A stretch of DNA of 64,000 nucleotides from assembly GCA_950097015.1 (NCBI GenBank), contig CATNEN010000032.1:62001-126000 (forward strand). Reading direction: 5' to 3'. The DNA is from Macrostomum hystrix (taxonomy: Eukaryota > Animalia > Platyhelminthes). Position 1 is the first letter of the stretch. The number at the start of each line of letters is the position of its first letter. A program made the position numbers and the translations under genes. Shown here piece by piece: positions 11,513 to 35,454 of the stretch. Below the pieces are notes generated by a model. It did no database searches. It was not told the origin of the DNA and saw only the letters and a list, made by a program, of their open reading frames with translations.

Positions 11513-11578
11513 CAGTGCCTAAATTAGGAGTGAAAAAATATTAATAATCGAATCTCTATAAATGAAATTGTCAGTCAC

Positions 11579-12106: not shown

Positions 12107-12797
12107 GGCAGTGCAGGAGCTGGGCTGTAACAGAAAGTAGAACCCTATTTGATAAAAATATGTGTTACTATACTTTTTCATATGCATTATAGAGCAAAGT
12201 ATTGACAATTTTCCTTTAAAAAACTACTTTGTCATATACAGGGGCTATTAAAACAATAAATAGCTATAGACAAGAATATAATTATAAAACAAGCAATAAT
12301 ACTAGGTAATAGGCCTATATCATTATTTAAATGCAAACTCTTTTTGAAAAGTCATACGCTCCTTATTAACTATTCTGTGAACCTGCAACTAATGATTTCT
12401 TACATTTTAGACCTTCTCTGGTCAGTTAGTTATGCATTTTTTAAATAGCTTATCTGCTTTTTATAACTTATAAGTGACAAAAAGGCATAGCTATACAACT
12501 AGAAATAAATATTTTCTGTGAGTTGAGATGTACTTTCTATAAGTACAGCCTGCATCACACTTAGCATTAGGCAGTATGTCTTTTATGAGCATATTTCCAA
12601 TGCACAGGCTTATTTTTCAAAAAAATATTTTACATTTTTGCACAAAATATGATAGTGTCAAAATTACTTTTATTGCTTTTGCTTGACAAGAATGCACTTT
12701 ATTGAATACTCTAATCAAATAACAAACAAACAAGATCCAACGAGCAACACTATACAGTTTTCAGAAAATATAATTATAAATCTATCGGCATCAGCGG

Positions 12798-12836: not shown

Positions 12837-13445
12837 ATAGTCGGTGCACATCGAGGGTTCGCGATTTTAGCAAACCCTTAAGATATTTGTCGAAAGCGAA
12901 TCATCAGTGATTTTACTATCAATATATTATATAACAGTTTAGTACACTAATTTATATAGATGAACGAATAGAAGCAGGCAGTAAAAAATTTGCTGCTGTA
13001 ATTTACTATAATGAGTAATTATTACAGATTTACAGTACATAATCTTGGAAAAAATATGCAATTAAACAAGTGCGAAACCAACTTTTTGAGAATTTTTGGC
13101 TAATATTACTTATATGACTTATATTGTCAAACAAGCTATTAGAAAACAAAAAATTGTACACCCAGCACTATATTTTTTAACATGCTTTCCTGAAATGCAG
13201 CTGAAATGGCACTTCCTTAAAACGCATGCTTCGTATTTTTTAAACCCGGCAAATCTTGTCAATTTTCGTGTACAAAAGTACAAACAATGTGAAGGACAGA
13301 AGCATCAATAGCTATTATATAATATTTTTTACTGAGTTTAGTTTAGTTTACTAGCAAGTTTTGCCCCCCTTCGGGGAGCAGAAATACTTTTAATTCGTCT
13401 AGTATATACTTTTTAGCAGCTGAATTTACAGCTTTTAAAAGCTAC

Positions 13446-15305
13446 AATGAACCCCCAGTTGACAATGATCCCCCAGTTGACAATGATCCCCCAGTTGACA
13501 ATGAACCCCCAGTTGACAACGATCCCACAGTTGACAATGATCCCCCATTTGACAATGATCCCCCAGTTAACAATGATCCCACAGTTAACAATGATCCCCC
13601 AGTTGACAAAGATCCCCCAGTTCACAATGATCACCCAGATGATGATGATCCCCCAGTTGATGATGATCCCCCAGTTGACAATGAACCCCCAGTTGACAAT
13701 GAACCCCCAGTTGACAACGATCCCACAGTTGACAATGATCCCCCATTTGACAATGATCCCCCAGTTGACAATGATCCCACAGTTGACAATGATCCCCCAG
13801 TTGACAATGATCCCCCAGTTGACAATGATCCCCCAGTTAACAAAGATCCCCCAGTTCACAATGATCCCCCAGTTGATGAAGTCTCCCCATTGATGATGAT
13901 CCCCAGTTAACAATGTTCCTCCATTTGACAATGTTCCCCCAGTTGACAATGATCCCCCAGTTGATGATGATCACCCAGTTGACAATGATCCCCCAGTTGA
14001 TGATGATCCCCCAGTTGACAATGAACCCCCAGTTGACAATGAACCCCCAGTTGACAACGATCCCACAGTTGACAATGATCCCCCATTTGACAATGATCCC
14101 CCAGTTGACAATGATCCCACAGTTGACAATGATCCCCCAGTTGACAAAGATCCCCCAGTTCACAATGATCACCCAGTTGATGATGATCCCCCAGTTGATG
14201 ATGATCCCCCAGTTGAAAATGATCCCCCAGTTGACAATGATCCCCCATTTGACAATGATCCCCCAGTTGACAATGATCCCCCAGTTAACAAAGATCCCCC
14301 AGTTCACAATGATCCCCCAGTTGATGAAGTCTCCCCATTGATGATGATCCCCAGTTAACAATGTTCCTCCATTTGACAATGTTCCCCCAGTTAACAATGA
14401 TCCCCCAGTTAATGATGATTCCCCAGTTGAAAATGATCCCCCAGTTGACAATGATCCCCCAGTTGAGAATGATCCCCCAGTTGACAATGATCCCCCAGTT
14501 AACAAAGATCCCCCAGTTCACAATGATCCCCCAGTTGATGAAGTCTCCCCATTGATGATGATCCCTAGTTAACAATGTTCCTCCAGTTGACAATGTTCCC
14601 CCAGTTGACAATGATCCCCCAGTTGATGATGATCCCCCAGTTGACAATGATCCCCCAGTTGACAATGATCCCCCAGTTGACAATGATCCCCCAGTTGACA
14701 ATGATCCCGCCGGTTGACAATGATCCCACAGTTGACAATGAACCCCCAGTTGACAATGATCCCCCAGTTGATGATGATCCCCCAGTTGACAATGATCCCC
14801 CAGTTGACAATGATCCCCCAGTTGACAATGAACCCCCAGTTGACAACGATCCCCCAGTTGACAATGATCCCCCAGTTGACAATGATCCCCCAGTTGACAA
14901 TGATCCCACAGTATACAATGATCCCCCAGTTGACAAAGATCCCCCAGTTCTCAATGATCCCCCAGTTGATGATGATCCCCAGTTGATGATGATTCCCCAG
15001 TTGACAATTATCCCCCAGTTGACCATTACCCCCCACTTGACAATGATCTCTCAGTTCACAATGATCCCCCCAGTTGACAATGATCCCCCAGTTGACAATG
15101 AACCCCCAGTTGACAATGAACCCCCAGTTGACAAAGATCCCCCAGTTGACAATGATCCCCCATTTGACAATGATCCCCCAGTTGACAATGATCCCCCAGT
15201 TGACAATGATCCCCCGGTTGACATTGATCCCCCAGTCGACAATTATCCCCCAGTTTACCATGATCCCCCAGTTCACCATGATCCCCATTTTGATGATGAC
15301 TCCCC
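13446..15305. repeat. 18-bp satellite (CCCAGTTGACAATGATCC)n inside L1, about 100 copies
   Basis: Read directly; source of the LTMIPQ / VDNDPP / NWGIIV periodic ORFs. Confidence 0.97.
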
Positions 15306-15324
15306 AGTTGACGTTGATTTTTCA

Positions 15325-17775
15325 AACAGGTTAGCCAAGATTCAAACTCAGGTTTCGCCATGTTTTAAACCCTGGTGGGCTATGATTCAAACTCTCGTTT
15401 TGCCATGATTCAGACTCTGGTTGGCTATGATTCAAACTCTGGTTTAGCCATGATTCAGACGCTGGTTTAGCCATGATTCAGACGCTGGTTTAGCCATGAT
15501 TGAAACTCTGGTTTAGCCATGATTCAAACTCTGGTTTAGCCATGATTCAGACGCTGGTTTAGCCATGATTCAGACTCTAGTTTAGCCATGATTCAGACTC
15601 TGGTTTAGCCATGATTCAGACTCTAGTTTAGCCATGATTCAGACTCTGGTTTAGCCATGATTCAGACTCTAGTTTAGCCATGATTCAGACTCTGGTTTAG
15701 CCATGATTCAGACTCTATTTTAGCCATGATTCAGACTATGGTTTAGCCATGATTCAGACGCTGGTTTAGCCATGATTCAGACGCTGGTTTAGCCATGATT
15801 CAGACGCTGGTTTAGCCATGATTGAAACGCTGGTTTAGCCATGATTCAGACTCTAGTTTAGCCATGATTCAGACTCTGGTTTAGCCATGATTCAGACTCT
15901 GGTTTAGCCATGATTCAGACTCTATTTTAGCCATGATTCAGACTATGGTTTAGCCATGATTCAGACTCCAGTTTAGCCATGATTCAGACTCTGGTTTAGC
16001 CATGATTCAGACTCTGTTTAAGCCATGATTCAGACTCTGGTTTAGCCATGATTTAAATTCTGGTTAAGCCATGATTCAGACTCTGGTTTAGCCATGATTC
16101 AAACTCTGGTTAAGCCATGATTCAAACTCTGGTTTAGCCATGATTCAAACTCTGGTTTAGCCATGATTCAGACGCTGGTTTAGCCATGATTCAGACTCTA
16201 GTTTAGCTATGATTCAGACTCTGGTTTAGCCATGATTCAGACTCTAGTTTAGCCATGATTCAGACTCTGGTTTAGCCATGATTCAGACTCTGGTTTAGCC
16301 ATGATTCAGACTCTGGTTTAGCCATGATTCAGACTCTGGTTAAGCCATGATTCAGACTCTGGTTTAGCCATGATTTAAATTCTGGTTAAGCCATGATTCA
16401 GACGCTGGTTTAGCCATGATTCAGACTCTAGTTTAGCCATGATTCAGACTCTGGTTTAGCCATGATTCAGACTCTAGTTTAGCCATGATTCAGACTCTGG
16501 TTTAGCCATGATTCAGACTCTGGTTTAGCCATGATTCAGACTCTGGTTTAGCCATGATTCAGACTCTGGTTAAGCCATGATTCAGACTCTGGTTTAGCCA
16601 TGATTTAAATTCTGGTTAAGCCATGATTCAGACGCTGGTTTAGCCATGATTGAAACTCTGGTTAAGCCATGATTCAAACTCTGGTTTAGCCATGATTCAG
16701 ACGCTGGTTTAGCCATGATTCAGACTCTAGTTTAGCCATGATTCAGACTCTGGTTTAGCCATGATTCAGACTCTGGTTTAGCCATGATTCAGACTCTATT
16801 TTAGCCATGATTCAGACTATGGTTTAGCCATGATTCAGACTCCAGTTTAGCCATGATTCAGACTCTGGTTTAGCCATGATTCAGACTCTGTTTAAGCCAT
16901 GATTCAGACTCTGGTTTAGCCATGATTTAAATTCTGGTTAAGCCATGATTCAGACTCTGGTTTAGCCATGATTCAAACTCTGGTTAAGCCATGATTCAAA
17001 CTCTGGTTTAGCCATGATTCAAACTCTGGTTTAGCCATGATTCAGACGCTGGTTTAGCCATGATTCAGACTCTAGTTTAGCCATGATTCAGACTCTGGTT
17101 TAGCCATGATTCAGACTCTAGTTTAGCCATGATTCAGACTCTGGTTTAGCCATGATTCAGACTCTGGTTTAGCCATGATTCAGACTCTATTTTAGCCATG
17201 ATTCAGACTCTGGTTTAGCCATGATTCAAACTCTGGTTAAGCCATGATTCAAACTCTGGTTTAGCCATGATTCAGACTCTGGTTAAGCCATGATTCAGAC
17301 TCTGGTTTAGCCATGATTTAAATTCTGGTTAAGCCATGATTCAGACTCTGGTTTAGCCATGATTCAAACTCTGGTTAAGCCATGATTCAAACTCTGGTTT
17401 AGCCATGATTCAAACTCTGGTTTAGCCATGATTCAGACGCTGGTTTAGCCATGATTCAGACTCTGGTTTATCCATGATTCAGACTCTGGTTTAGCCATGA
17501 TTCAGACTCTGGTTTAGCCATGATTCAAACTCTGGTTAAGCCATGATTCAGACTCTGGTTTAGCCATGATTCAGACTCTGGTTTAGCCATGATTCAGACT
17601 CCAGTTTAGCCATGATTCAAACTCTGGTTAAGCCATGATTCAGACTCTGGTTTAGCCATGATTCAGACTCTGGTTTAGCCATGATTCAGACTCTGGTTTA
17701 GCCATGATTCAGACGCTGGTTTAGCCATGATTCAAGCTCTATTTTTGCCATGATTCAAATTCAGGTTTGCTATGA
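15325..17775. repeat. 23-bp satellite (CTCTGGTTTAGCCATGATTCAGA)n inside L1, about 105 copies
   Basis: CATG recurs at 15541 and 15564 (period 23). Confidence 0.97.
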
Positions 17776-18376
17776 TTTATGATATTTTATTTACGAAATG
17801 AAAAAATAAATTAAAATAATCTTCAATCACTACTGGCTGAAAATTAGTCTAAATGATTTGACGCAGTGCAGAATCGAACCCTAGCCTAGCCTAACCTATT
17901 CCTAGTGCCTACACATCGGCTATTCCGACTGTTGGTTAGTGGGTGCAAAAATCTGCCTTATAAAATGAATTCTCAAAGTTCTGGCTTTGTACAATGAAGT
18001 AAGAAAATAGAGTACACTCAGTCTCGCGGTTGGTTGTGTACATTTATTTCCAATTTGTCTCCAGAGTGCAGGCTTCAAATTCAATCAGCTAGGGGTTGTT
18101 GCGCAATTTGACGACGCAATTCTAATTCAGTGGCTGTCAGTGAAATTCTCAATAGGCCAAGATGGTTTGACCTTTGAAAAAATCATGTTTTTCGAATATT
18201 TAATCCCTTTTGCAATAAAGTTAAGCTTAATAAAAATACGTGTATAATTGTCCCCATATTTGGCATCTTTTGGTGAAGAAATGGTGAAAATCGGTTGAGC
18301 CGTTCGGGAGAAAATCAATTACAACCAACCAACCAACCAACCAACCAACCAACCATTTCATTTTTAGTATAGTGGA

Positions 18377-21300
18377 CTAGCAAGTTTTGCCCCCCTTCGG
18401 GGAGCAGAAATATTTTTAATTCGTCTATTATATACTTTTTAGCAGCTGAATTTACAGCTTTTTAATTCTACATTGATCCCCCAGTTGACAATGATCCCCC
18501 AGTTAGCAATGATCCCGCAGTCGACAATGATCCCCCAGTTGACAAAGATCCCCCAGTTCACAATGAACCCCCAGTTGACAATGATCCCCCAGTTGACAAT
18601 GATCCCCCAGTTGACAATGATCCCCCAGTTGACAATGATCCCCCAGTTGACAATGATCCCCCAGTTGACAATGATCCCCCAGTTGACAATGATCCCCCAG
18701 TTGACAATGATCCCCCAGTTAACAAAGATCCCCCAGTTCACAATGATCCCCCAGTTGATGATGACTCCCCATTGATGATGATCCCCAGTTAACAATGTTC
18801 CTCCAGTTGACAATGTTCCCCCAGTTGACAATGATCCCCCAGTTGATGATGATCACCCAGTTGACAATGATCCCCCAGTTGACAATGATCCCCCAGTTGA
18901 CAATGATTCCCCAGTTGACAATGATCCCGCCCGTTGACAATGATCCCACAGTTGACAATGAACCCCCAGTTGACAATGATCCGCCAGTTGATGATGATCC
19001 CCCAGTTGACAATGATCCCCCAGTTGACTATGATCCCCCAGTTGACAATGAACCCCAGTTGACAACGATCCCCCAGTTGACAATGATCCCCCAGTTGACA
19101 ATGATCCCGCCCGTTGACAATGATCCCACAGTTGACAATTAACCCCCAGTTGACAATGAACCCCCAGTTGACAATGAACCCCCAGTTGACAATGATCCCC
19201 CAGTTGACAATGATCCCCCCGTTGACAATGATCCCCCAGTTGACAATGAACCCCCAGTTGACAATGATCCCCCAGTTGACAATGATCCCCCAGTTGACAA
19301 TGATCCCCCAGTTGACAATGATCCCCCAGTTGACAATGATCCCCCAGTTGACAATGATCCCCCAGTTGACAATTATCCCCCAGTTTACCATGATCCCCCA
19401 GTTGACGATTATCCCCCAGTTCACCATGATCCCCATTTTGATGATGACTCCCCAGTTGACGTTGATTTTTCAAACGCTGGGTTAGCCAAGATTCAAACTC
19501 AGGTTTCGACATGTTTTAAACCCTGGTGGGCTATGATTCAAACTCTCGTTTTGCCATGATTCAGACTCTGGTTGGCTATGATTCAAACTCTGGTTTAGCC
19601 ATGATTCAAACTCTGGTTTAGCCATGATTCAAACTCTGGTTTAGCCATGATTCAAACTCTGGTTTAGCCATGATTCAAACGCTGGGTTAGCCATTATTGA
19701 AACTCGGTTTTTGCCATGATTCAAACTCTGGTTTAGCCATGATTCAAACGCCGGGTTAGCCATGATTGAAACTCTGGTTTAGCCAAGATTCAAACTCTGG
19801 TTGGCTATGATTCAAACTCTGGTTTAGCCATGATTCAAACTCTGGTTTAGCCATGATTCAAACTCTGGTTTAGCCATGATTCAGACGCTGGTTTAGCCAT
19901 GCTGATGATGATGGTTTAGCCATGATTCAGACTCTGGTTTAGCCATGATTCAAACTCTGGTGTAGCCATTATTCAAACTCTGGTTTAGCCATGATTCAAA
20001 CTCTGGTTTAGCCATGATTCAGACGCTGGTTTAGCCATGCTGATGATGATGGTTTAGCCATGATTCAAAGCCTGGTGTAGCCATGATTTAGTCTCTGGTT
20101 TAGCCATGATTCAAACTCTGGTTTAGCCATGATTCAGACGCTGGTTTAGCCATGATTCAGACGCTGGTTTAGCCATGATTTAGTCTCTGGTTTAGCCATG
20201 ATTCAAACTCTGGTTTAGCCATGATTCAAACTCTGGTTTAGCCATGATTCAGACTCTAGTTTAGCCCTGATTCAAACTCTGGTTTAGCCATGATTCAGAC
20301 GCTGGTTTAGCCATGATTCAGACTCTGGTTTAGCCATGATTCAGACGCTGGTTTAGCCATGATTTAGTCTCTGGTTTAGCCATGATTCAAACTCTGGTTT
20401 AGCCATGATTCAGACGCTGGTTTAGCCATGATTCAGACTCTGGTTTAGCCATGATTCAGACGCTGGTTTAGCCATGACTTAGTCTCTGGTTTAGCCATGA
20501 TTCAAACTCTGGTTTAGCCATGATTCAGACGCTGGTTTAGCCATGATTTAGTCTCTGGTTTAGCCCTGATTCAAACTCTGGTTTAGCCATGATTCAGACG
20601 CTGGTTTAGCCATGATTCAGACTCTGGTTTAGCCATGATTCAGACGCTGGTTTAGCCATGATTTAGTCTCTGGTTTAGCCATGATTCAAACTCTGGTTTA
20701 GCCATGATTCAGACGCTGGTTTAGCCATGATTTAGTCTCTGGTTTAGCCATGATTCAAACTCTCGTTTTGCCATGATTCAGACTCTGGTTGGCTATGATT
20801 CAAACTCTGGTTTAGCCATGATTCAAACTCTGGTTTAGCCATGATTCAAACTCTGGTTTAGCCATGATTCAAACTCTGGTTTAGCCATGATTCAAACGCT
20901 GGGTTAGCCATTATTGAAACTCGGTTTTTGCCATGATTCAAACTCTGGTTTAGCCATGATTCAAACGCCGGGTTAGCCATGATTGAAACTCTGGTTTAGC
21001 CAAGATTCAAACTCTGGTTGGCTATGATTCAAACTCTGGTTTAGCCATGATTCAAACTCTGGTTTAGCCATGATTCAAACTCTGGTTTAGCCATTATTCA
21101 GACGCTGGTTTAGCCATGCTGATGATGATGGTTTAGCCATGATTCAGACTCTGGTTTAGCCATGATTCAAACTCTGGTTTAGCCATGATTCAGACGCTGG
21201 TTTAGCCATGCTGATGATGATGGTTTAGCCATGATTCAAACTCTGGTTTAGCCATGCTGATGATGATGGTTTAGCCATGATTTAGTCTCTGGTTTAGCCA

Positions 21301-24300
21301 TGATTCAAACTCTGGTTTAGCCATGATTCAGACGCTGGTTTAGCCATGATTCAGACTCTGGTTTAGCCATGATTCAGACGCTGGTTTAGCCATGACTTAG
21401 TCTCTGGTTTAGCCATGATTCAAACTCTGGTTTAGCCATGATTCAGACGCTGGTTTAGCCATGATTTAGTCTCTGGTTTAGCCCTGATTCAAACTCTGGT
21501 TTAGCCATGATTCAGACGCTGGTTTAGCCATGATTCAGACTCTGGTTTAGCCATGATTCAGACGCTGGTTTAGCCATGATTTAGTCTCTGGTTTAGCCAT
21601 GATTCAAACTCTGGTTTAGCCATGATTCAGACGCTGGTTTAGCCATGATTTAGTCTCTGGTTTAGCCATGATTCAAACTCTCGTTTTGCCATGATTCAGA
21701 CTCTGGTTGGCTATGATTCAAACTCTGGTTTAGCCATGATTCAAACTCTGGTTTAGCCATGATTCAAACTCTGGTTTAGCCATGATTCAAACTCTGGTTT
21801 AGCCATGATTCAAACGCTGGGTTAGCCATTATTGAAACTCGGTTTTTGCCATGATTCAAACTCTGGTTTAGCCATGATTCAAACGCCGGGTTAGCCATGA
21901 TTGAAACTCTGGTTTAGCCAAGATTCAAACTCTGGTTGGCTATGATTCAAACTCTGGTTTAGCCATGATTCAAACTCTGGTTTAGCCATGATTCAAACTC
22001 TGGTTTAGCCATGATTCAGACGCTGGTTTAGCCATGCTGATGATGATGGTTTAGCCATGATTCAGACTCTGGTTTAGCCATGATTCAAACTCTGGTGTAG
22101 CCATTATTCAAACTCTGGTTTAGCCATGATTCAAACTCTGGTTTAGCCATGATTCAGACGCTGGTTTAGCCATGCTGATGATGATGGTTTAGCCATGATT
22201 CAAACTCTGGTTTAGCCATGCTGATGATGATGGTTTAGCCATGATTCAAAGCCTGGTGTAGCCATGATTTAGTCTCTGGTTTAGCCATGATTCAAACTCT
22301 GGTTTAGCCATGATTCAGACGCTGGTTTAGCCATGATTCAGACGCTGGTTTAGCCATGATTTAGTCTCTGGTTTAGCCATGATTCAAACTCTGGTTTAGC
22401 CATGATTCAAACTCTGGTTTAGCCATGATTCAGACTCTAGTTTAGCCCTGATTCAAACTCTGGTTTAGCCATGATTCAGACGCTGGTTTAGCCATGATTC
22501 AGACTCTGGTTTAGCCATGATTCAGACGCTGGTTTAGCCATGATTTAGTCTCTGGTTTAGCCATGATTCAAACTCTGGTTTAGCCATGATTCAGACGCTG
22601 GTTTAGCCATGATTCAGACTCTGGTTTAGCCATGATTCAGACGCTGGTTTAGCCATGATTTAGTCTCTGGTTTAGCCATGATTCAAACTCTGGTTTAGCC
22701 ATGATTCAGACGCTGGTTTAGCCATGATTTAGTCTCTGGTTTAGCCCTGATTCAAACTCTGGTTTAGCCATGATTCAGACGCTGGTTTAGCCATGATTCA
22801 GACTCTGGTTTAGCCATGATTCAGACGCTGGTTTAGCCATGATTTAGTCTCTGGTTTAGCCATGATTCAAACTCTGGTTTAGCCATGCTGATGATGATGG
22901 TTTAGCCATGATTCAAAGCCTGGTGTAGCCATGATTTAGTCTCTGGTTTAGCCATGATTCAAACTCTGGTTTAGCCATGATTCAGACGCTGGTTTAGCCA
23001 TGATTCAGACGCTGGTTTAGCCATGATTTAGTCTCTGGTTTAGCCATGATTCAAACTCTGGTTTAGCCATGATTCAAACTCTGGTTTAGCCATGATTCAG
23101 ACTCTAGTTTAGCCCTGATTCAAACTCTGGTTTAGCCATGATTTAGTCTCTGGTTTAGCCATGATTCAGACTCTGGTTTAGCCATGCTGATGATGATGGT
23201 TTAGCCATGATTCAAAGCCTGGTGTAGCCATGATTTAGTCTCTGGTTTAGCCATGATTCAAACTCTGGTTTAGCCATGATTCAGACGCTGGTTTAGCCAT
23301 GATTCAGACGCTGGTTTAGCCATGATTTAGTCTCTGGTTTAGCCATGATTCAAACTCTGGTTTAGCCATGATTCAGACGCTGGTTTAGCCATGATTCAGA
23401 CTCTGGTTTAGCCATGATTCAGACGCTGGTTTAGCCATGATTTAGTCTCTGGTTTAGCCATGATTCAAACTCAGGTTTAGCCATGATTCAGACGCTGGTT
23501 TAGCCATGATTCAGACGCTGGTTTAGCCATGATTTAGTCTCTGGTTTAGCCATGATTCAGACTCTGGTTTAGCCATGCTGATGATGATGGTTTAGCCATG
23601 ATTCAAAGCCTGGTGTAGCCATGATTTAGTCTCTGGTTTAGCCATGATTCAAACTCTGGTTTAGCCATGATTCAGACGCTGGTTTAGCCATGATTCAGAC
23701 GCTGGTTTAGCCATGATTTAGTCTCTGGTTTAGCCATGATTCAAACTCTGGTTTAGCCATGATTCAAACTCTGGTTTAGCCATGATTCAGACGCTGGTTT
23801 AGCCATGATTTAGTCTCTGGTTTAGCCATGATTCAAACTCTGGTTTAGCCATGATTCAGACGCTGGTTTAGCCATGATTCAGACTCTGGTTTAGCCATGA
23901 TTCAGACGCTGGTTTAGCCATGATTTAGTCTCTGGTTTAGCCATGATTCAAACTCTGGTTTAGCCATGATTCAGACGCTGGTTTAGCCATGATTTAGTCT
24001 CTGGTTTAGCCCTGATTCAAACTCTGGTTTAGCCATGATTCAGACGCTGGTTTAGCCATGATTCAGACTCTGGTTTAGCCATGATTCAGACGCTGGTTTA
24101 GCCATGATTTAGTCTCTGGTTTAGCCATGATTCAAACTCTGGTTTAGCCATGATTCAGACGCTGGTTTAGCCATGATTTAGTCTCTGGTTTAGCCATGAT
24201 TCAAACTCAGGTTTAGCCATGATTCAGACGCTGGTTTAGCCATGATTCAGACGCTGGTTTAGCCATGATTGAAACTCTGGTTTAGCCATGATTCAGACGC

Positions 24301-25536
24301 TGGTTTAGCCATGATTCAGACGCTGGTTTAGCCATGATTCAGACGCTGGTTTAGCCATGATTGAAACTCTGGTTTAGCCATGATTGAAACTCTGGTTTTG
24401 CCATGATTCAGACTCTGGTTTCGCCATGATTCAAACTCTGGTTTAGCCATGGTTCAAACTCTGGTTTAGCCATGATTCAGACTCTAGTTTAGCCATGATT
24501 CAGACTCTGGTTTAGCCATGATTCAAACTCTGGTGTAGCCATTATTCAAACTCTGGTTTAGCCATGATTCAAACTCTGGTTTAGCCATGCTGATGATGAT
24601 GGTTTAGCCATGATTCAAAGCCTGGTGTAGCCATGATTTAGTCTCTGGTTTAGCCATGATTCAAACTCTGGTTTAGCCATGATACAGACGCTGGTTTAGC
24701 CATGATTCAAACTCTGGTTTAGCCATGATTGAAACTCTGGTTTTGCCATGATTCAGACTCTGGTTTAGCCATGATTCAAACTCTGGTTTAGCCATGGTTC
24801 AAACTCTGGTTTAGCCATGATTCAGACTCTAGTTTAGCCATGATTCAGACTCTGGTTTAGCCATGATTCAGACTCTGGTTTAGCCATGATTCAAACTCTA
24901 TTTTTGCAATGATTCAAACTCAGGTGTGCTATGATTTATGATATTTTATTTACGAAATGAAAAAAATAAATTAAAATAATCTTCAATCACTACTGGCTGA
25001 AAATTAGTCTAAATGATTTGACGCAGTGCAGAATCGAACCCTAGCCTAGCCTAACCTATTCCTAGTGCCTACACATCGGCTATTCCGACTGTTGGTTAGT
25101 GGGTGCAAAAATCTGCCTTATAAAATGAATTCTCAAAGTTCTGGCTTTGTACAATGAAGTAAGAAAATAGAGTACACTCAGTCTCGCGGTTGGTTGTGTA
25201 CATTTATTTCTAATTTGTCTCCAGAGTGCAGGCTTCAAATTCAATCAGCTAGGGGTTGTTGCGCAATTTGACGATGCAATTCTAATTCAGTGGCAGTGAG
25301 TAAAATTCTCAATAGGCCAAGATGGTTTGACCTTTGAAAAAATCATGTTTTTCGAATATTTAATCCCCTTAGCAATAAAGTTAAGCTTAATAAAAATACG
25401 TGTATAATTCTCCCCATATTTAGCATCTTTTGGTGAAGAAATGGTGAAAATCGGTTGAGCCGTTCGGGAGCTAGTCGATTGCAAACATACAAGCAAGCAA
25501 GCAAGCAAGCAAGATTTTCATTTTTAGTATATTAGA
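18377..25536 (-). mobile_element. Long Helitron unit L2 (7160 bp): 18-bp array about 18470-19460, 23-bp array about 19480-24930
   Basis: Same 3' hairpin-CTAG and unique body as L1. The 5' terminus TCTAATATACT... is of the S type. Confidence 0.88.
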
Positions 25537-25864
25537 CTAGCTGCCTTCGCTACCCTCTGGGTAGCCTCCCTGTGAGTTCTTATCAGTTCGTTATCAAAAC
25601 TGGCTCTGATGCAATCATTAAAATTGGCACTGGAGCCTCACTGTGCACAAGCTGAAAACAAGAATGCATTAGAAAAGCCTATTTAAAACTGTTTTTCGAA
25701 TATTTAATCCCCTTGGCAATGGAATTAAGCTTAATAAAAATACGTGTACCGATTCCGGCCCATTTGTGATCTTTTGGTGAAGGAATTGTGAAAATCGGTT
25801 GAGCCGTTCGGGAGCTAGTCGATTGCAAACAAGCAAGCAAGATTTTCATTTTTAGTATATAAGA
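25537..25864 (-). mobile_element. Short Helitron unit S (328 bp) between L2 and L3
   Basis: 3' end (minus) GCTACCC-AGA-GGGTAGC hairpin, 8 nt, then CTAG; 5' end TCTTATATACTAAAAATG. Confidence 0.9.
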
Positions 25865-28800
25865 CTAGCAAGTTTTGCCCCCCTTCGGGGAGCAGAAAAA
25901 ATTTTTAACTCGTCCAGTATATACTTTTTAGCAGCTGTATTGTCAGCCTTTTTTGCGCTACAATGATCAGTTGACAATGATCCCCCAGTTGATAATGATC
26001 CCCCAGTTGACAATGATCCCCCAGTTGATAATGATCCCCCAGTTGACAATGATCCCCCAGTTGACAATGATCCCCCAGTTGACAATGATCCCCCAGTTGA
26101 TAATGATCACCCAGTTGACAATGATCCCCCAGTTGACAATGATCCCCCAGTTGACAATGATCCCCCAGTTGACAATGATCTCCCAGTTGACAATGATCCA
26201 CCAGTTGACAATGATCCCCCAGTTGACAATGATCCCACAGTTGACAATGATCCCCCAGTTGACAATGATCCCCCAGTTGATAATGATCACCCAGTTGACA
26301 ATGATCCTCCAGTTGACAATGATCCCCCAGTTGACAATGATCCCCCAGTTGACAATGATCTCCCAGTTGACAATGATCCACCAGTTGACAATGATCCCCC
26401 AGTTGACAATGATCACCCAGTTGAAGATGATCCCCCAGTTGACAATGATCCCACAGTTGACAATGATCCCCCAGTTGATGATGATCCCCCAGTTTACAAT
26501 GATCTCCCAGTTGACAATGATCCCCCAGTTGAAGATGATCCCCCAGTTGACAATGATCACCCAGTTCACAATGATCCCCAGTTGGCCATGATCCCCTAGT
26601 TGACAATGATCCTACAGTTGACAATGATCCCCCAGTTGACAATGATCCCCCAGTTGATAATGATCCCCCAGTTGACAATGATCCCCCAGTTGACAATGAT
26701 CCCCCAGTTGACAATGATCCCCCAGTTGATAATGATCACCCAGTTGACAATGATCCCCCAGTTGACAATGATCCCCCAGTTGACAATGATCCCCCAGTTG
26801 ACAATGATCTCCCAGTTGACAATGATCCACCAGTTGACAATGATCCCCCAGTTGACAATGATCCCACAGTTGACAATGATCCCCCAGTTGACAATGATCC
26901 CCCAGTTGATAATGATCACCCAGTTGACAATGATCCTCCAGTTGACAATGATCCCCCAGTTGACAATGATCCCCCAGTTGACAATGATCTCCCAGTTGAC
27001 AATGATCCACCAGTTGACAATGATCCCCCAGTTGACAATGATCACCCAGTTGAAGATGATCCCCCAGTTGACAATGATCCCACAGTTGACAATGATCCCC
27101 CAGTTGATGATGATCCCCCAGTTTACAATGATCTCCCAGTTGACAATGATCCCCCAGTTGAAGATGATCCCCCAGTTGACAATGATCACCCAGTTCACAA
27201 TGATCCCCAGTTGGCCATGATCCCCTAGTTGACAATGATCCTACAGTTGACAATGATCCCCCAGTTGACAATGATCCCCCAGTTGATGATGATCCCCCAG
27301 TTTACAATGATCTCCCAGTTGACAATGATCCCCCAGTTGAAGATGATCCCCCAGTTGACAATGATCACCCAGTTCACAATGATCCCCAGTTGGCCATGAT
27401 CCCCTAGTTGACAATGATCCTACAGTTGACAATGATCCCCCAGTTGACAATGATCCCCCAGTTGACATGATTACCCAGTTGACAATCATTCCCCAGTGGA
27501 CAATGATCCCCTAGTTGACAATGATCCCCCAGTTGAAAATGATACCCCAGTTGACAATGATCCCCCAGTTGACGATGATCCCCCAGTTGACAATGATCCC
27601 CCAGTTGACAATGATCCCCCAGTTGACAATGATCCCCCAGTTGACAATGATCCCCCAGTTGACAATTATCCCCCAGTTTACCATGATCCCCCAGTTGACG
27701 ATTATCCCCCAGTTCACCATGATCCCCATTTTGATGATGACTCCCCAGTTGACGTTGATTTTTCAAACACTGGGTTAGCCAAGATTCAAACTCAGGTTTC
27801 GCCATGTTTTAAACCCTGGTGGGCTATGATTCAAACTCTCGCCATGATTCAGACTCTGGTTGGCTATGATTCAAACTCTGGTTTAGCCAAGATTCAAACT
27901 CTGGTTTAGCCATGTTTTAAACCCTGGTGGGCTATGATTCAAACTCTCGTTTTGCCATGATTCAGACTCTGGTTTAGCCATGATTCAGACTCTGGTTTTG
28001 CCATGATTCAAGCTCTGGTTTAGCCATGTTTCAAACTCTGGTTTAGCCATGATTCAAACTCTGGTTTAGCCATGATTCAGACTCTGGTTTAGCCATGATT
28101 CAGACTCTGGTTTAGCCATGATTCAGACTCTGGTTTAGCCATGATTCAAACTCTGGTTTAGCCATGATTCAGACTCTGGTTTAGCCATGATTCAAACTCT
28201 GGTGTAGCCATGATTCAGACTCTGGTTTAGCCATGATTCAAACTCTGGTGTAGCCATGATTCAGACTCTGGTTTAGCCATGATTCAAACGCTGGTGTAGC
28301 CATGATTCAAACTCTGGTGTAGCCATGATTCAGACTCCGGTTTAGCCATGATTCAAACGCTGGTGTAGCCATGATTCAGACTCTGGTTTTGCCATGATTT
28401 AGACTCTATTGTTGCAATGATTCAAACTCAGATTTGCTATGATTTATGATATTTTATTTACGAAATGAAAAAAATAAATCAAAATAATCTTCAATCACTA
28501 CTGGCTGAAAATTAGTCTAAATGATTTGACGCAGTGCAGAATCGAACCCTAGCCTAGCCTATAACCTATTCCTAGTGCCTACACATCGGCTATTCCGACT
28601 GTTGGTTAGTGGGTGCAAAAATCAGCCTTATAAAATGAATTATCAAAGTTCTGGCTTTGTACAATGAAGTGAGAAAATAGAGTACACTCAGTCTCACGGT
28701 TGGTTGTGTACATTTATTTCCAATTTGTCTCCAGAGTGCAGGCTTCAAATTCAATCAGCTAGGGGTTGTTGCGCAATTTGACGATGCAATTCCAATTCAG

Positions 28801-29048
28801 TGGCAGTCAGTGAATGAAATTCTCAATAGGCCAAGATAGTTTGACCTTTGAAATGGTCAAAAAACATGTTTTTCGAATATTTAATCCCCTTAGCAATAAA
28901 GTTAAGCTTAATAAAAATACGTGTACAATTGTCCCCATATTTAGCATCTTTTGGTGAAGAAATAGTGAAAATCGGTTAAGCCGTTTTTGAGAAAATCGAT
29001 CGCGCATACATATATATATATAGATAGTTTTCATCTTTAGTTATATGA
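25865..29048 (-). mobile_element. Long Helitron unit L3 (3184 bp): 18-bp array about 25965-27740, 23-bp array about 27770-28440
   Basis: Same termini and body as L1/L2 but more diverged; 5' end TCATATAACTAAAGATGAAAA followed by (TA)n. Confidence 0.87.
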
Positions 29049-32000
29049 CTAGCTGCCTTCGCTACCCTCTGGGTAGCCTCCCTGTGAGTTCTTATCAGTA
29101 CGCGCGTGCGTTATCAAAACTGGCTCTGATGCAATCATTAAAGTTGGCACTGGAGCCTCACTGTGCACAAGCTGAAAACAAGAATGCATTAGAAAAGCCT
29201 ATTTAAAACTGTTTTTCGAATATTTAATCCCCTTGGCAATGGAATTAAGCTTAATAAAAATACGTGTACCGATTCCGGCCCATTTGTGATATTTTGGCGA
29301 AGGAATTGTGAAAATCGGTTGAGCCGTTCGGGAGCTAGTCGATTGCAAACATACAAGCAAGATTTTCATTTTTAGTATATTAGAAGACTAGCTGCCTTCG
29401 CTACCCTCTGGGTAGCCTCCCTGTGAGTTCTTATCAGTACGCGCGTGCGTTATCAAAACTGGCTCTGATGCAATCATTAAATTTGGCACTGGAGGCCTCA
29501 CTGTGCACAAGCTGTAAACAAGAATGCATTAGAAAAGCCTATTTAAAACAGTTTTTCGAATATTTAATCCCCTTGCCAATGGAATTAAGCTTAATAAAAT
29601 TACGTGTACCGATTCCGGCCCATTTGTGATCTTTTGGCGAAGGAATTTTGAAAATCGGTTGAGCCGTTCGGGAGCTAGTCGATTGCAAACAAACATACAA
29701 ACATACAAACATACAAGATTTTCATTTTTAGTATATTAGACTAGCTGCCTTCGCTACCCTCTGGGTAGCCTCACTTGAGTTCTTATCAGTGCGTTATCAA
29801 AATTGGCTCTGATGCAATCATTAAAATTGGCACTGGAGCCTCACTGTGCACAAGCTGAAAACAAGAATGCATTAGAAAAGCCTATTTAAAACTGTTTTTC
29901 GAATATTTAATCCCCTTGCCAATGGAATTAAGCTTAATAAAAATACGTGTACCGATTCCGGCCCATTTGTGATCTTTTGGCGAAGGAATTGTGAAAATCG
30001 GTTGAGCCGTTCGGGAGCTAGTCGATTGCAAACATACAAACATACAAGATTTTCATTTTTAGTATATTAGACTAGCTGCCTTCGCTACCCTCTGGGTAGC
30101 CTCACTGGAGTTCTTATCAGTTCGTTATCAAAACTGGCTCTGATGCAATCATTAAAATTGGCACTGGAGCCTCACTGTGCACAAGCTGAAAACAAGAATG
30201 CATTAGAAAAGCCTATTTAAAGCAGTTTTTCGAATATTTAATCCCCTTGGCAATGGAATTAAGCTTAATAAAAATACGTGTACCGATTCCGGCCTATTTG
30301 TGATCTTTTGGTGAAGGAATTGTTAAAATCGGTTGAGCCGTTCGGGAGCTAGTCGATTGCAAACATACAAACATACAAACATACAAACAAGATTTTCATT
30401 TTTAGTATATTAGACTAGCTGCCTTCGCTACCCTCTGGGTAGCCTCCCTGTGAGTTCTTATCAGTACGCGCGTGCGTTATCAAAACTGGCTCTGATGCAA
30501 TCATTAAAATTGGCACTGGAGGCCTCACTGTGCACAAGCTGAAAACAAGAATGCATTAGAAAAGCCTATTTAAAACAGTTTTTCGAATATTTAATCCCCT
30601 TGGCAATGGAATTAAGCTTAATAAAAATACGTGTACCGATTCCGGCCCAATTGCGATCTTTTGGCGAAGGAATTGCGAAAATCGGTTGAGCCGTTCGGGA
30701 GCTAGTCGATTGCAAACAAGCAAGCAAGATTTTCATTTTTAGTATATTAGAAGACTAGCTGCCTTCGCTACCCTCTGGGTAGCCTCCCTGTGAGTTCTTA
30801 TCAGTACGCGCGTGCGTTATCAAAACTGGCTCTGATGCAATCATTAAATTTGGCACTGGAGGCCTAACTGTGCACAAGCTGAAAACAAGAATGCATTAGA
30901 AAAGCCTATTTAAAACTGTTTTTCGAATATTTAATCCCCTTGCAAATGGAATTAAGCTTAATAAAATTACGTGTACCGATTCCGGCCCATTTGTGATCTT
31001 TTGGCGAAGGAATTGCGAAAATCGGTTGAGCCGTTCGGGAGCTAGTCGATTGCAAACAAACATACAAGCAAGATTTTCATTTTTAGTATATAAGACTAGC
31101 TGCCTTCGCTACCCTCTGGGTAGCCTCACTGGAGTTCTTATCAGTTCGTTATCAAAACTGGCTCTGATGCAATCATTAAAATTGGCACTGGAGCCTCACT
31201 GTGCACAAGCTGAAAACAAGAATGCATTAGAAAAGCCTATTTAAAACTGTTTTTCGAATATTTAATCCCCTTGGCAATGGAATTAAGCTTAAAAAAAATA
31301 CGTGTACCGATTCGGGCCCATTTGTGATCTTTTGGCGAAGGAATTGTGAAAATCGGTTGAGCCGTTCGGGAGCTAGTCGATTGCAAACATACAAACATAC
31401 AAACATACAAACAAGATTTTCATTTTTAGTATATAGAAGCAAGCAAGCAAGATTTTCATTTTTAGTATATTAGACTAGCTGCCTTCGCTACCCTCTGGGT
31501 AGCCTCCCTGTGAGTTCTTATCAGTACGCGCGTGCGTTATCAAAACTGGCTCTGATGCAATCATTAAAATTGGCACTGGAGCCTCACTGTGCACAAGCTG
31601 TAAACAAGAATGCATTAGAAAAGCCTATTTAAAACTGTTTTTCGAATATTTAATCCCCTTGGCAATGGAATTAAGCTTAATAAAATTACGTGTACCGATT
31701 CCGGCCCAATTGTGATCTTTTGGCGAAGGAATTGTGAAAATCGGTTAAGCCGTTCGGGAGCTAGTCGATTGCAAACAAGCAAGCAAGATTTTCATTTTTA
31801 GTATATAAGACTAGCTGCCTTCGCTACCCTCTGGGTAGCCTCACTGGAGTTCTTATCAGTGCGTTATCAAAACTGGCTCTGATGCAATCATAAAAATTGG
31901 CACTGGAGCCTCACTGTGCACAAGCTGAAAACAAGAATGCATTAGAAAAGCCTATTTAAAACTGTTTTTCGAATATTTAATCCCCTTGCCAATGGAATTA

Positions 32001-33819
32001 AGCTTAATAAAATTACGTGTACCGATTCCGGCCCATTTGTGATCTTTTGGCGAAGGAATTGCGAAAATCGGTTGAGCCGTTCGGGAGCTAGTCGATTGCA
32101 AACATACAAACATACAAACAAGATTTTCATTTTTAGTATATTAGACTAGCTGCCTTCGCTACCCTCTGGGTAGCCTCCCTGTGAGTTCTTATCAGTTCGT
32201 TATCAAAACTGGCTCTGATGCAATCATTAAAATTGGCACTGGAGCCTCACTGTGCACAAGCTGAAAACAAGAATGCATTAGAAAAGCCTATTTAAAACTG
32301 TTTTTCGAATATTTAATCCCCTTGGCAATGGAATTAAGCTTAATAAAAATACGTGTACCGATTCCGGCCCATTTGTGATCTTTTGGCGAAGGAATTGCGA
32401 AAATCGGTTAAGCCGTTCGGGAGCTAGTCGATTGCAAACATACAAACATACAAACAAGATTTTCATTTTTAGTATATTAGACTAGCTGCCTTCGCTACCC
32501 TCTGGGTAGCCTCACTGGAGTTCTTATCAGTGCGTTATCAAAACTGGCTCTGATGCAATCATTAAAATTGGCACTGGAGCCTCACTGTGCACAAGCTGAA
32601 AACAAGAATGCATTAGAAAAGCCTATTTAAAACTGTTTTTCGAATATTTAATCCCCTTGGCAATGGAATTAAGCTTAATAAAAATACGTGTACCGATTCC
32701 GGCCCATTTGTGATCTTTTGGCGAAGGAATTGCGAAAATCGGTTAAGCCGTTCGGGAGCTAGTCGATTGCAAACATACAAACATACAAACAAGATTTTCA
32801 TTTTTAGTATATTAGACTAGCTGCCTTCGCTACCCTCTGGGTAGCCTCACTGGAGTTCTTATCAGTGCGTTATCAAAACTGGCTCCGATGCAATCATTAA
32901 AATTGGCACTGGAGCCTCACTGCGCACAAGCTGAAAACAAGAATGCATTAGAAAAGCCTATTTAAAACTGTTTTTCGAATATTTAATCCCCTTGGCAATG
33001 GAATTAAGCTTAAAAAAAATACGTGTACCGATTCGGGCCCATTTGTGATCTTTTGGCGAAGGAATTGTGAAAATCGGTTGAGCCGTTCGGGAGCTAGTCG
33101 ATTGCAAACATACAAGCAAGATTTTCATTTTTAGTATATAAGACTAGCTGCCTTCGCTACCCTCTGGGTAGCCTCCCTGTGAGTTCTTATCAGTACGCGC
33201 GTGCGTTATCAAAACTGGCTCTGATGCAATCATTAAATTTGGCACTGGAGGCCTAACTGTGCACAAGCTGAAAACAAGAATGCATTAGAAAAGCCTATTT
33301 AAAACTGTTTTTCGAATATTTAATCCCCTTGCAAATGGAATTAAGCTTAATAAAATTACGTGTACCGATTCCGGCCCATTTGTGATCTTTTGGCGAAGGA
33401 ATTGCGAAAATCGGTTGAGCCGTTCGGGAGCTAGTCGATTGCAAACATACAAGCAAGCAAGATTTTCATTTTTAGTATAATAAGAAGACTAGCTGCCTTC
33501 GCTACCCTCTGGGTAGCCTCACTGGAGTTCTTATCAGTTCGTTATCAAAACTGGCTCTGATGCAATCATAAAAATTGGCACTGGAGCCTCACTGTGCACA
33601 AGCTGAAAACAAGAATGCATTAGAAAAGCCTATTTAAAACTGTTTTTCGAATATTTAATCCCCTTGGCAATGAAATTAAGCTTAATAAAATTACGTGTAC
33701 CGATTCCGGCCCAATTGTGATCTTTTGGCGAAGGAATTGTGAAAATCGGTTGAGCCGTTCGGGAGCTAGTCGATTGCAAACATACAAACATACAAGATTT
33801 TCTTTTTTAGTATATAAGA
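29049..33819 (-). mobile_element. Tandem array of 14 short Helitron units (about 327-353 bp each) plus a 37-bp 5'-end stub
   Basis: CTAG unit starts on the + strand at 29049, 29388, 29741, 30072, 30415, 30755, 31096, 31475, 31811, 32146, 32482, 32817, 33144 and 33489. Unit length varies mainly through the ACAT/AAGC microsatellite. Confidence 0.92.
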
Positions 33820-35454
33820 AGCCCATCTTATACTTTAGATTTTTTATTTGTTTGGTATGTATATTCGTTAGCTTTAGGGCTGCTAGGGGCCTACGGCACA
33901 CCTTATATAATAATTTTTGTACAGACTTCCTAATTTGTACTTGTATAGGCTGTCCCTGCAGTACTGTACCCACCTCCTCGATCTCCATCCCCACTTGACG
34001 CATGAACAGAAACGAGTAGATCCGCACGCATGCGAAAAACTAAGACTTTAAATAAATCTGACACTATAGTCTTTGCACAATTAGGCCTAATAATTCCAGT
34101 TATAATTGCGCTGAATGTCTTTTGATCCTTGACGACCTAGAGTAGTATTTTATATTGGGGATTATTGTTGTAATGTATTTTATGAACAATGTCATCCCAA
34201 AGTCAGTAAGGTGGCTTCAGCATGCATAGCTCAGTATCGAACACACTGTAGGCCGAATATATGTCTTATCAAGTATCAGTCAATGGTTATGTGAGGCCTA
34301 AATAAGAATGGTAGCACACTCCTGGTCTAGCTAGGACTAATACATTGGGTCTAGGCCTACCTCTTATCAATAGCCAGGCTAGCCCCTACATTTTTTATAT
34401 TACTATTAGTTATGGCTCATTTATCTAATTAATTTAGGATATAAACTATATAGGCCCTAATTGGCCTAGGTTTAAAAATTGCTAGTTTAGAATTATACTA
34501 CACTTATACTTTGACCTTTGTTTGAACATTTATAGCTGTATATGTTTCTTTGCAAATTGTACATATTTTACAACTCTGTTAAAGTTGTAACATGAACGAT
34601 ACTAGAATTACGGTATTATTATGTATTATGTATATACATAGTTATACATATGTTACTATGTATAACATAGTAACATAGAATTACTATGTTACTGTAATTC
34701 TAGTATCGAAATTATTGAAAGTATTGAAAAACCAAATTATGCCAAATTAAAAACCAAGATAGGCCTATTCAAAACATTTATAATAGGCCCATGAGCAATT
34801 AAGGTAGCCTTATTGATAAAAAATATTCCTATGTTAACTTAAGTTAATATATGAAGCAAACCAATATTTTCAGCTTAAAGCTTAAAAAATTTCACAATGC
34901 CTTACCTGAATGAAAAAAGTTAATCATTGTAGTATCTTTAGAATACACTGTATAGTTAATTTATATAATCATTATGTAGCTTAACATAAAAAATATAATA
35001 GCTAGCTTACACTCTTCAGATAACTTATCATCAAATAATATAAGTTGTTGTACTAATTTAATTCAACACTTGTATAATAATTGAAAAAATTAGGCCCCTA
35101 CTCAACTAAGTTCAATGATATGCCATTGACTCTGCCTGTAATGTAATTTATCTGGTCCTTAATCACATATGTCCATATGAAAAATGTTGTAGATGCTAGT
35201 TTGACATTGCTGCATGAGTGCAGTTGTTCAAGCTACTTTAGTCAGATTTAAGTGTATATCCATTTTTGTAAATTAAAGCTTCATTTTGCCTAAATGAGAA
35301 ATGTAACTTATCCTTTTAAGACAGTATTCAAAGACTAAATAGAAATTTATTTCATTTGCAATTTTATGTTATATTTTTTTTCCTTTAACCTCTTTTAGAA
35401 GTAATCTGTATTTGCAGTGATTTTTTAATGCCTATATATTTTTTCTTCTGACAG

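What the first reader, a model, noticed from the sequence alone, without database searches (positions are those of the whole stretch)
13351..33819. 20.5-kb mixed rolling-circle concatemer of 18 non-autonomous Helitrons of two families
What looks like several unrelated satellites is one array of complete Helitron units joined precisely at CTAG|TC with no target DNA between them: L1-L2-S-L3-(S)x14, all in one orientation. Each unit has a 5' TC, a microsatellite, and a 3' hairpin 11-12 nt before CTAG. Tandem Helitrons are known, but an array that interleaves two families with different 3' ends and 0.33-7 kb sizes suggests either rolling-circle read-through concatemers or repeated targeting of new copies to the CTAG|T end of resident copies. 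No RepHel gene is present, so mobilisation must be in trans.
Basis: partly seen in the sequence, partly recalled or inferred. Interest (0 to 1): 0.8.

Follow-up and report, generated by a model that had tools for sequence, protein, structure and literature searches.

The report
Head-to-tail train of small Helitrons
What looks like several satellites is a 20.5-kb one-way chain of 18 complete, non-coding rolling-circle transposons (Helitrons) joined exactly end to start; it is a clean example of a kind of array that is already known and that this scan has met many times in the same genome.

Summary
On the minus strand, 13351-33819 is an unbroken chain of 18 units. Each starts with TC and ends with a 7-8 bp hairpin, 11-12 nt and CTAG. 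The order on the plus strand is L1-L2-S-L3-Sx14.

Contigs from two organisms show the same ends next to unrelated DNA, so the units are dispersed, high-copy mobile elements and not only a satellite.

- **Families:** calling them "two families" overstates it. S and L share a ~190-nt 5' head and differ in body and terminator. The size range of L (3.2-7.2 kb) comes from two internal minisatellites.
- **Single read-through:** one rolling-circle read-through is unlikely. The S units are a mosaic of genome-wide subtypes with almost no private mutations. Neighbours are no more alike than distant units. The three L heads differ, and one is an S/L chimera.
- **Best reading:** stepwise joining of copies at resident Helitron ends, followed by some unequal recombination. 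The route is inferred, not shown.
- **Not confirmed:** the 5' flank is T, not the canonical A. Array length was not confirmed by long reads.
- **Novelty:** tandem Helitron arrays and satellite-carrying Helitrons are published. This scan had already noted many CTAG|TC trains elsewhere in this genome.

Verdict: a real, tidy, ordinary case.

The parts
13351..33819 (-). Whole train: 18 non-autonomous Helitron-type units, head to tail, with no foreign DNA between them
   Evidence: Junction list, unit table, tandem-repeat map
29049..33819 (-). Run of 14 S units (327-379 bp). Each has a TC start, a microsatellite, a conserved core, a 7-bp hairpin with a 3-nt loop, 8 nt and CTAG
   Evidence: Units are 94-99% identical with mosaic variants
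25865..29048 (-). L3 (3184 bp). Head plus L-specific body 28445-29048, 23-mer minisatellite 27762-28444, 18-mer minisatellite 25968-27753, tail with hairpin and CTAG 25865-25967
25537..25864 (-). Single S unit (328 bp) lying between L3 and L2; both of its joints are heterotypic
   Evidence: The best-supported loose ends in other runs sit at 25864; one X3 contig has one at 25536
18377..25536 (-). L2 (7160 bp). Chimeric head (S-type for about the first 90 aligned columns, then L-type) plus body 24937-25536, 23-mer minisatellite about 19461-24936, 18-mer minisatellite 18470-19460, tail 18377-18469
13351..18376 (-). L1 (5026 bp). Head plus body 17778-18376, 23-mer minisatellite 15331 to about 17777, 18-mer minisatellite 13444-15312, tail 13351-13443 ending CTAG and followed by flank T
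33820..33830 (-). 5' outer flank. The base next to the first TC is T, not the canonical A. No target-site duplication with the 3' flank
   Evidence: Read directly
11519..12208 (-). Nearest gene: N-terminal exon of a TM9SF/EMP70 gene on the same strand as the train. The train's 3' end lies about 1.1 kb upstream of it
   Evidence: Pfam EMP70 hits on 11519-12208 and 3446-4537

Best explanation
This is a train of 18 complete non-autonomous Helitron-type transposons from one very abundant group in this animal genome.

All units share a ~190-nt 5' head: a TC terminus, a microsatellite slot and a conserved core. By analogy with characterised Helitrons, this is where a RepHel transposase supplied in trans would nick to start strand displacement. 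The group has two alternative 3' ends (S and L). Both have the same geometry: a 7-8 bp GC-rich hairpin, a 3-nt loop, and 11-12 nt to the end, finishing in CTAG. This would be the stop signal. L also carries a ~400-nt private body and two minisatellites (23-mer and 18-mer). Their expansion explains the 3.2-7.2 kb sizes.

Every joint (CTAG|TC) is the same joint that RepHel makes when it closes a Helitron circle.

The train was built in several steps, not by one read-through:
- At least four base-precise heterotypic joints link copies that were already different from each other.
- The S run mixes genome-wide subtypes.

My preferred route, at about 0.5, is that copies (single or short multimers) were added one after another exactly at the end of a resident copy. 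Unequal recombination and conversion then duplicated and reshuffled some units: U4-U6, U9-U10 versus U13-U14, and the chimeric L2 head.

Shown: the anatomy, the exact joints, abundance and dispersal, shared variants, and the lack of a neighbour effect.
Inferred: trans-mobilisation by RepHel, the order of events, and end-targeting.

The confidence figure of 0.6 blends about 0.9 for the identity (a multi-step Helitron train with one head and two tails) with about 0.5 for the stepwise end-addition route.
For: **Anatomy**
- 18 of 18 units run from TC to CTAG with a predicted 3' hairpin.
- The signature is absent elsewhere in the window.
- The array's outer ends and all heterotypic joints fall in the same phase.

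**Mobility**
- 1272 contigs of run X1 and 206 of X2 (a second organism) lie on a 1-kb probe.
- Summed word depth is about 10^5, against 60-85 for single long contigs.
- The best-supported loose ends sit at place 25864: 18 contigs in X1 and 11 in X2 with the L tail followed by diverse DNA, and 7 in X2 with the S 5' end preceded by diverse DNA.
- One X3 contig has a loose end at 25536.

**One group with two tails**
- S and L share a head at 77-83% identity over ~185-190 nt.

**Multi-step origin**
- S units differ by 3.3% on average but carry only 0-3 private substitutions each.
- 52 of 99 variable columns are shared between units.
- The 8-bp indel that splits the S units is also seen in about 13% (X1) and 18% (X2) of depth genome-wide (table 4).
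- Divergence does not rise with distance (Mantel r=0.05, p=0.33). Neighbours are not more alike than random pairs (p=0.62).
- The three L heads are 48-76% identical in the first 55 aligned columns, while the L bodies are 97-99% identical.

**Recombination**
- The L2 head is 100% and 97% S-like over about the first 90 aligned columns, then L-like.
- U4-U6 are 98-99% identical. U9-U10 pairs with U13-U14 at 98%.

**Chemistry**
- Helraiser forms circles with a precise LTS-RTS joint, and these serve as donors (PMC5876387).
Against: - The 5' outer flank is T, not A. The simple model (each new copy lands in the A|T formed by the host A and the resident's first T) is therefore not borne out at this locus, unless that base has mutated.
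- Three joints carry an extra TCT.
- There is no age gradient along the train (rho=-0.01), although power is very low.
- No empty site, no autonomous partner and no circles were examined here.
- Gene conversion with other loci could also import shared variants into an array born as a homogeneous concatemer.
- The assembly across 15 kb of minisatellite and satellite is unverified. Contigs that cross the two heterotypic joints have fewer than 31 letters on one side (table 8).
Confidence: 0.6

Rival explanations
1. Single rolling-circle read-through. One replication run on a circular or tandem donor missed the terminator repeatedly and integrated as a ready-made concatemer. Present differences arose afterwards.
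For: Exact CTAG|TC joints equal the circle joint (PMC5876387). The literature attributes tandem Helitron arrays to rolling-circle replication (PMC11934779 discussion, PMC12001565). U4-U6 are 98-99% identical and could be such a product.
Against: One donor cannot give S and L tails and three different L heads. Variation between S units is shared and mosaic, with only 16 private substitutions in 15 units. The subtype-defining indel is genome-wide and present in a second organism. If the donor was already a mixed train, the question only moves to another locus.
Confidence: 0.15
2. Ordinary satellite dynamics. A few Helitrons happened to insert next to each other. Unequal crossing-over, slippage and gene conversion then produced the 18 units.
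For: Chimeric L2 head, near-identical U4-U6, and a two-unit block repeated at an offset of 4 units. The mosaic haplotypes are of the kind unequal exchange produces. An earlier follow-up on another train of this genome judged about half its copies to be recombination products (unchecked).
Against: Recombination cannot create base-precise joints between different elements. At least four such joints link copies with different heads and microsatellite motifs. There is no neighbour effect or regular higher-order period. The founders would still need end-to-end insertion.
Confidence: 0.25
3. Assembly artefact. Repeats from several loci were collapsed or chained by the assembler into one array.
For: About 15 kb of the 20.5 kb is minisatellite or 335-bp satellite from a family with roughly 10^3-fold summed depth. 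No laid contig spans the probe, and no long read was available.
Against: Units differ enough (94-99%) to be placed individually. Joints are in phase and clean. Short contigs of independent runs X7 and X3 run across the S|L2 and L3|S joints, but with only 17 and 21 letters on one side (table 8). Similar trains were noted at many other loci of this genome (unchecked).
Confidence: 0.05
4. The units are Helentron/Helitron2-type (HINE-like) elements rather than canonical Helitrons. Such elements insert between T and T and carry subterminal inverted repeats.
For: The train sits between T and T. The L tail holds a short inverted look-alike of the 5' terminus about 50 nt from its end (read). HINE-type elements typically carry internal tandem repeats. 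Tandem arrays are reported to be more frequent for Helitron2 in Xenopus (PMC12001565).
Against: The inverted match is no better than shuffled controls; 79-486 of 500 shuffles score as well. The termini TC and CTAG, with a hairpin 11-12 nt from the end, are the canonical pattern (PMC13404089, PMC12001565). In X2 the diverse DNA next to S 5' ends has a consensus starting with the complement of A, although agreement is only 0.49.
Confidence: 0.1

Closest known systems
Tandem Helitron arrays or concatemers in plants and bats (Xiong, Dooner & Du 2016; Pritham & Feschotte 2007, as cited in PMC5876387 and PMC11934779)
   Same: Head-to-tail Helitron copies in one orientation, joined 3' end to 5' end, and taken as a footprint of rolling-circle replication.
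   Different: From memory of the 2016 abstract (not read here), the plant arrays are mostly decayed or truncated, often with many 5' ends and a single 3' end. Here all 18 units are complete. Two terminator types are mixed, and the units are not copies of one template.
Helraiser/Helibat (5' TC ... CTAG 3') and its circular intermediates (PMC5876387)
   Same: The same terminal dinucleotide and tetranucleotide and a 3' hairpin. The circle's LTS-RTS joint is the same joint seen 17 times here.
   Different: The circles are episomal monomers shown in cell culture. Here the joint is chromosomal and links different elements. There is no sequence similarity, and no transposase was tested.
Satellite-carrying non-autonomous Helitrons: Meloidogyne centromeric intermediate sequences (PMC13404089), Heli2Xen in Xenopus (PMC12001565), Helitron-2/DINE-type repeats in Drosophila virilis (PMC3833285), HSymSHlR in Hydractinia (PMC11934779)
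   Same: Short non-coding Helitron derivatives that carry micro- or minisatellites. They reach very high copy number and form or seed satellite-like arrays.
   Different: In those cases the tandem repeat is mainly internal to the element or lies beside it. Here, besides the internal minisatellites, the whole element is itself the repeat unit, with exact end-to-start joints.
Chimeric Helitrons made by end bypass (Thomas et al. 2014, PMC4224331)
   Same: One 5' end combined with different 3' ends, as in S versus L.
   Different: S and L diverge inside the element after ~190 nt, not downstream of an intact S terminator. Simple read-through of S therefore did not create L.

Membership tests
Canonical Helitron (Helitron1/HLE1), non-autonomous | 5' terminus TC | tested here: met
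   18 of 18 units. Three units have an extra TCT before the usual start.
Canonical Helitron (Helitron1/HLE1), non-autonomous | 3' terminus CTRR | tested here: met
   CTAG in 18 of 18 units.
Canonical Helitron (Helitron1/HLE1), non-autonomous | Short GC-rich hairpin about 10-12 nt from the 3' end | tested here: met
   S has a 7-bp stem and 12 nt to the end. L has an 8-bp stem with one G.T pair and 11 nt to the end. DNA folds give z = -1.9 to -2.4. The signature is absent elsewhere in the window.
Canonical Helitron (Helitron1/HLE1), non-autonomous | Insertion between A and T without target-site duplication | tested here: inconclusive
   No TSD, and the 3' flank is T. The 5' flank of the train is T, not A. 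In X2 the consensus next to S 5' ends starts with the complement of A, but agreement is only 0.49.
Canonical Helitron (Helitron1/HLE1), non-autonomous | No terminal inverted repeats | tested here: met
   Head versus reverse-complemented tail alignments score no better than shuffles.
Canonical Helitron (Helitron1/HLE1), non-autonomous | Dispersed copies with the same ends in different flanks | tested here: met
   The best-supported loose ends sit exactly at the unit boundary at 25864, with diverse continuations, in runs of two organisms.
Canonical Helitron (Helitron1/HLE1), non-autonomous | An autonomous RepHel element with matching termini in the same genome | not testable with these tools
   None in the window. 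Earlier scan notes report an intact RepHel element inside a 330-bp train elsewhere in this genome. Its sequence could not be compared here.
Helentron / Helitron2 (HINE-like) | Asymmetric or subterminal inverted repeats of the 5' end near the 3' end | tested here: not met
   The best inverted match is 6-13 nt and is equalled in 79-486 of 500 shuffles.
Helentron / Helitron2 (HINE-like) | Insertion between T and T | tested here: inconclusive
   This train lies between T and T. That is one site only, and the X2 loose-end consensus suggests A at the 5' side.
Classical satellite DNA | Array homogenised by local unequal exchange, so neighbours are more alike than distant units or a regular higher-order period is present | tested here: not met
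   Mantel r=0.05, p=0.33. Adjacent versus random pairs p=0.62. Only two local duplications are visible.

The most novel reading that the evidence does not exclude
The transposase of this Helitron group preferentially integrates new copies exactly at the terminus of a resident copy, re-using the CTAG|TC circle joint as its target. Trains would then grow unit by unit like a cassette array, and heterogeneous elements that share only the 5' head would be collected at single sites across the genome.
Probability: 0.3. Interest if true: 0.65.

Novelty: new member of a known kind. Interest (0 to 1): 0.33.

Why it matters
This is an unusually clean chromosomal record of Helitron end-to-start joining in an animal. 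The units are complete, the joints are exact, and two terminators are mixed on one shared head.

Taken together with the many similar trains noted in this genome, it could serve as material to test whether Helitrons target each other's ends, and how they seed satellite DNA. On its own, one more train adds little. Tandem Helitron arrays and satellite-carrying Helitrons are already described in plants, bats, flies, frogs, nematodes and cnidarians.

Tried and rejected
- **Helentron-type subterminal inverted repeats.** A short inverted look-alike of the 5' end in the L tail was no better than shuffled controls.
- **Age gradient along the train.** Private mutations against position gave rho=-0.01, with too few mutations to say anything.
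- **Distance-decay of similarity among S units.** None was found.
- **Solo copies within the window.** BLAST of the S unit, the L head and the L tail, plus a generic scan for hairpin-CTAG-T, found none outside the array.
- **Copies in public collections.** The conserved head core has no exact match in the metagenome or viral contigs.
- **Earlier notes by sequence.** The look-up was blank.
- **RNA genes.** The L body contains a tRNA T-arm-like motif, but ARAGORN and Rfam found nothing.
- **RepHel in the window.** There was no Helitron_like_N or PIF1 hit among the 19 ORFs of at least 110 aa scanned outside the minisatellites. Short exons would be missed.
- **Organism identity.** Not established. 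"Flatworm" is another agent's word. I ran no further search on it.
- **Papers not held in the library.** Two papers could not be read.
Full report
**What is there**

Tandem Repeats Finder shows what look like separate satellites between 13.4 and 33.8 kb:
- an 18-mer array, present three times
- a 23-mer array, present three times
- a 335-bp repeat with 14.6 copies

Reading the minus strand resolves these into one structure. A scan for CTAGT on that strand finds 18 sites between 13354 and 33492. Each site is preceded by one of two hairpin-bearing tails. All but the last are followed at once by a TC-initiated head; the last, at 13354, is followed by flank DNA.

The resulting units, in plus-strand coordinates, are:
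- L1: 13351-18376
- L2: 18377-25536
- S: 25537-25864
- L3: 25865-29048
- 14 S units filling 29049-33819

Fourteen of the 17 internal joints read CTAG|TC. Three have an extra TCT before the usual start.

The junction motif is far above chance, with 13 matches against 0.34 expected. The composite signature (perfect GC-rich hairpin, short spacer, CTAG, T) occurs 18 times in the array and nowhere else on either strand of the window.

**Anatomy of the units**

S units are 327-379 bp long. Each consists of:
- the TC terminus
- a microsatellite about 25 nt in
- a conserved core
- a 7-bp hairpin with a 3-nt loop
- 8 nt and then CTAG

L units have an 8-bp hairpin (one G.T pair) with a 3-nt loop, then 7 nt and CTAG. 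The hairpins therefore end 11-12 nt from the element's last base, which is the classical Helitron geometry.

S and L are not unrelated. Their first ~185-190 nt align at 77-83% identity, including the terminus, the microsatellite slot and a well-conserved core. After that they diverge completely. S runs about 145 nt to its terminator. L continues with a ~400-nt private body, a 23-mer minisatellite, an 18-mer minisatellite and a ~95-nt tail. Differences in minisatellite length account for the 3.2, 5.0 and 7.2 kb sizes.

There is no target-site duplication and no significant terminal or subterminal inverted repeat.

**Are the units mobile elements or just a satellite phase?**

Any 335-bp monomer may contain a CTAG, so phase alone proves little. 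Three things do.

First, the array's two outer ends fall in the same phase.

Second, the heterotypic joints (S|L3, L3|S, S|L2, L2|L1) fall in the same phase too.

Third, I laid Logan contigs of four public runs on 24937-25967, which covers the L2 head, the single S unit and the L3 tail. The results were:
- The family is very abundant. 1272 contigs of X1 lie on the probe, and 206 of X2, which is labelled as a different organism.
- Summed word depth is about 10^5, against 60-85 for individual long contigs. The tool warns that this is not a copy number.
- The best-supported loose ends lie at place 25864.
- There, the L tail is followed by diverse DNA in 18 contigs of X1 and 11 of X2.
- There, the S 5' end is preceded by diverse DNA in 7 contigs of X2.
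- One X3 contig has a loose end at place 25536.
- S|S tandem joints are also present.

**How was the train made?**

Four observations argue against a single rolling-circle read-through.
1. The three L copies have 97-99% identical bodies but clearly different heads. The heads are 48-76% identical in the first 55 aligned columns, with (TA)n, (CTTG)n and (GGTT)n microsatellites. They were therefore different copies before they were joined.
2. S units differ by 3.3% on average, yet each has only 0-3 private substitutions, 16 in all. 52 of 99 variable columns are shared between units in mosaic combinations.
3. The 8-bp indel that splits the S units into two types is also present in about 13% of depth in X1 and 18% in X2 (table 4). 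The subtypes are therefore genome-wide and older than this array.
4. Similarity does not fall with distance. The Mantel test gives r=0.05, p=0.33, and neighbours are no more alike than random pairs (p=0.62).

Local duplication and recombination did contribute:
- U4-U6 are 98-99% identical.
- The pair U9-U10 recurs as U13-U14 at 98%.
- The L2 head is S-type for about the first 90 aligned columns (100% and 97% identity to S), then L-type at 77% identity to S.

Recombination, however, cannot create base-precise joints between different elements. The joints are chemically the joint that a Helitron transposase makes when it closes a circle. Such circles are donors for further transposition (PMC5876387).

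I therefore favour stepwise addition of copies at the end of resident copies, with later recombination. I put this at about 0.5. Block transposition, or read-through of pre-formed trains, comes second. Recombination from a few founders comes third.

The weak points of the preferred route are:
- The 5' flank of the train is T, not A.
- There is no detectable age gradient, though power is low.
- There is no empty-site or polymorphism evidence at this locus.

**Context**

The train is intergenic. Its 3' end lies about 1.1 kb upstream of the N-terminal exon of a TM9SF/EMP70 gene on the same strand. The Pfam hits are on 11519-12208 and 3446-4537. The intron between those exons holds a BEL/Pao retrotransposon.

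No RepHel or PIF1 domain appears in any scanned ORF of at least 110 aa in the window. Mobilisation, if it is current, must therefore be in trans.

No RNA run was on offer, so expression is unknown.

**Comparison with what is known**

- Plant tandem concatemers are attributed to rolling-circle replication (PMC11934779, citing Xiong et al. 2016).
- Helitron-derived tandem arrays and satellite-carrying non-autonomous Helitrons are described in Xenopus (PMC12001565), Meloidogyne (PMC13404089), Drosophila virilis (PMC3833285) and Hydractinia (PMC11934779).
- Chimeric Helitrons with swapped ends are known from bats (PMC4224331).

The present case differs by degree. All units are complete, the joints are exact, and two terminators on one head are interleaved.

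This scan's own notes list many other CTAG|TC trains in the same genome. They include one with "one shared head and three alternative terminators" and one with an intact transposase-carrying element inside a 330-bp train. Those notes are unchecked leads. I used them as context, not as evidence.

**Verdict**

This is a new member of a known kind, of modest interest by itself. It would be more useful as one data point in a genome-wide test of end-targeted Helitron integration.

Noticed in passing
window 5758-9822 (+): A 1354-aa open frame of a BEL/Pao LTR retrotransposon (Peptidase_A17, RVT_1, DUF1759, DUF5641). It sits in the intron between the two TM9SF/EMP70 exons.
   Followed up: partly
window 56047-59768: A KDZ transposase in at least two exons (58357-58971 and 59181-59768), with a B-box zinc-finger ORF just upstream (57530-57958). 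A DDE_3 transposase fragment lies on the other strand at 56047-56502. The KDZ gene was already noted by the scan.
   Followed up: partly
window 36287-39500 and 10904-11511: Other long minisatellites: a 28-mer array from 36510 that produces a spurious 997-aa ORF, a 23/46-mer array at 36287-36522, and a 34-mer array at 10904-11511. None has a hairpin-CTAG-T end nearby.
   Followed up: partly
window 13413-15408, 18439-19512, 25905-27909: The 18-mer minisatellite is six codons long. It therefore yields ORFs of up to 277 aa on both strands, which are almost certainly artefacts of periodicity.
   Followed up: no
window 28520-28580 (L3 body; the same segment occurs in L1 and L2): The L-specific body contains a motif resembling a tRNA T-arm (GGTTCGATTC). 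This hints at a captured tRNA-derived or SINE-like fragment. ARAGORN and Rfam found nothing.
   Followed up: partly
run X1 contigs laid on window 25534-25864 (table 5c): Some S|S tandem joints elsewhere in the genome seem to lack the starting TC, reading CTAG followed directly by TAATATAC (summed depth 822). Others carry variant starts. The alignment at this short repeat is ambiguous.
   Followed up: no
window 45382-46026 (-): An exon encoding armadillo repeats (Pfam Arm, E = 1e-26). It belongs to the next recognisable host gene on the far side of the train.
   Followed up: no
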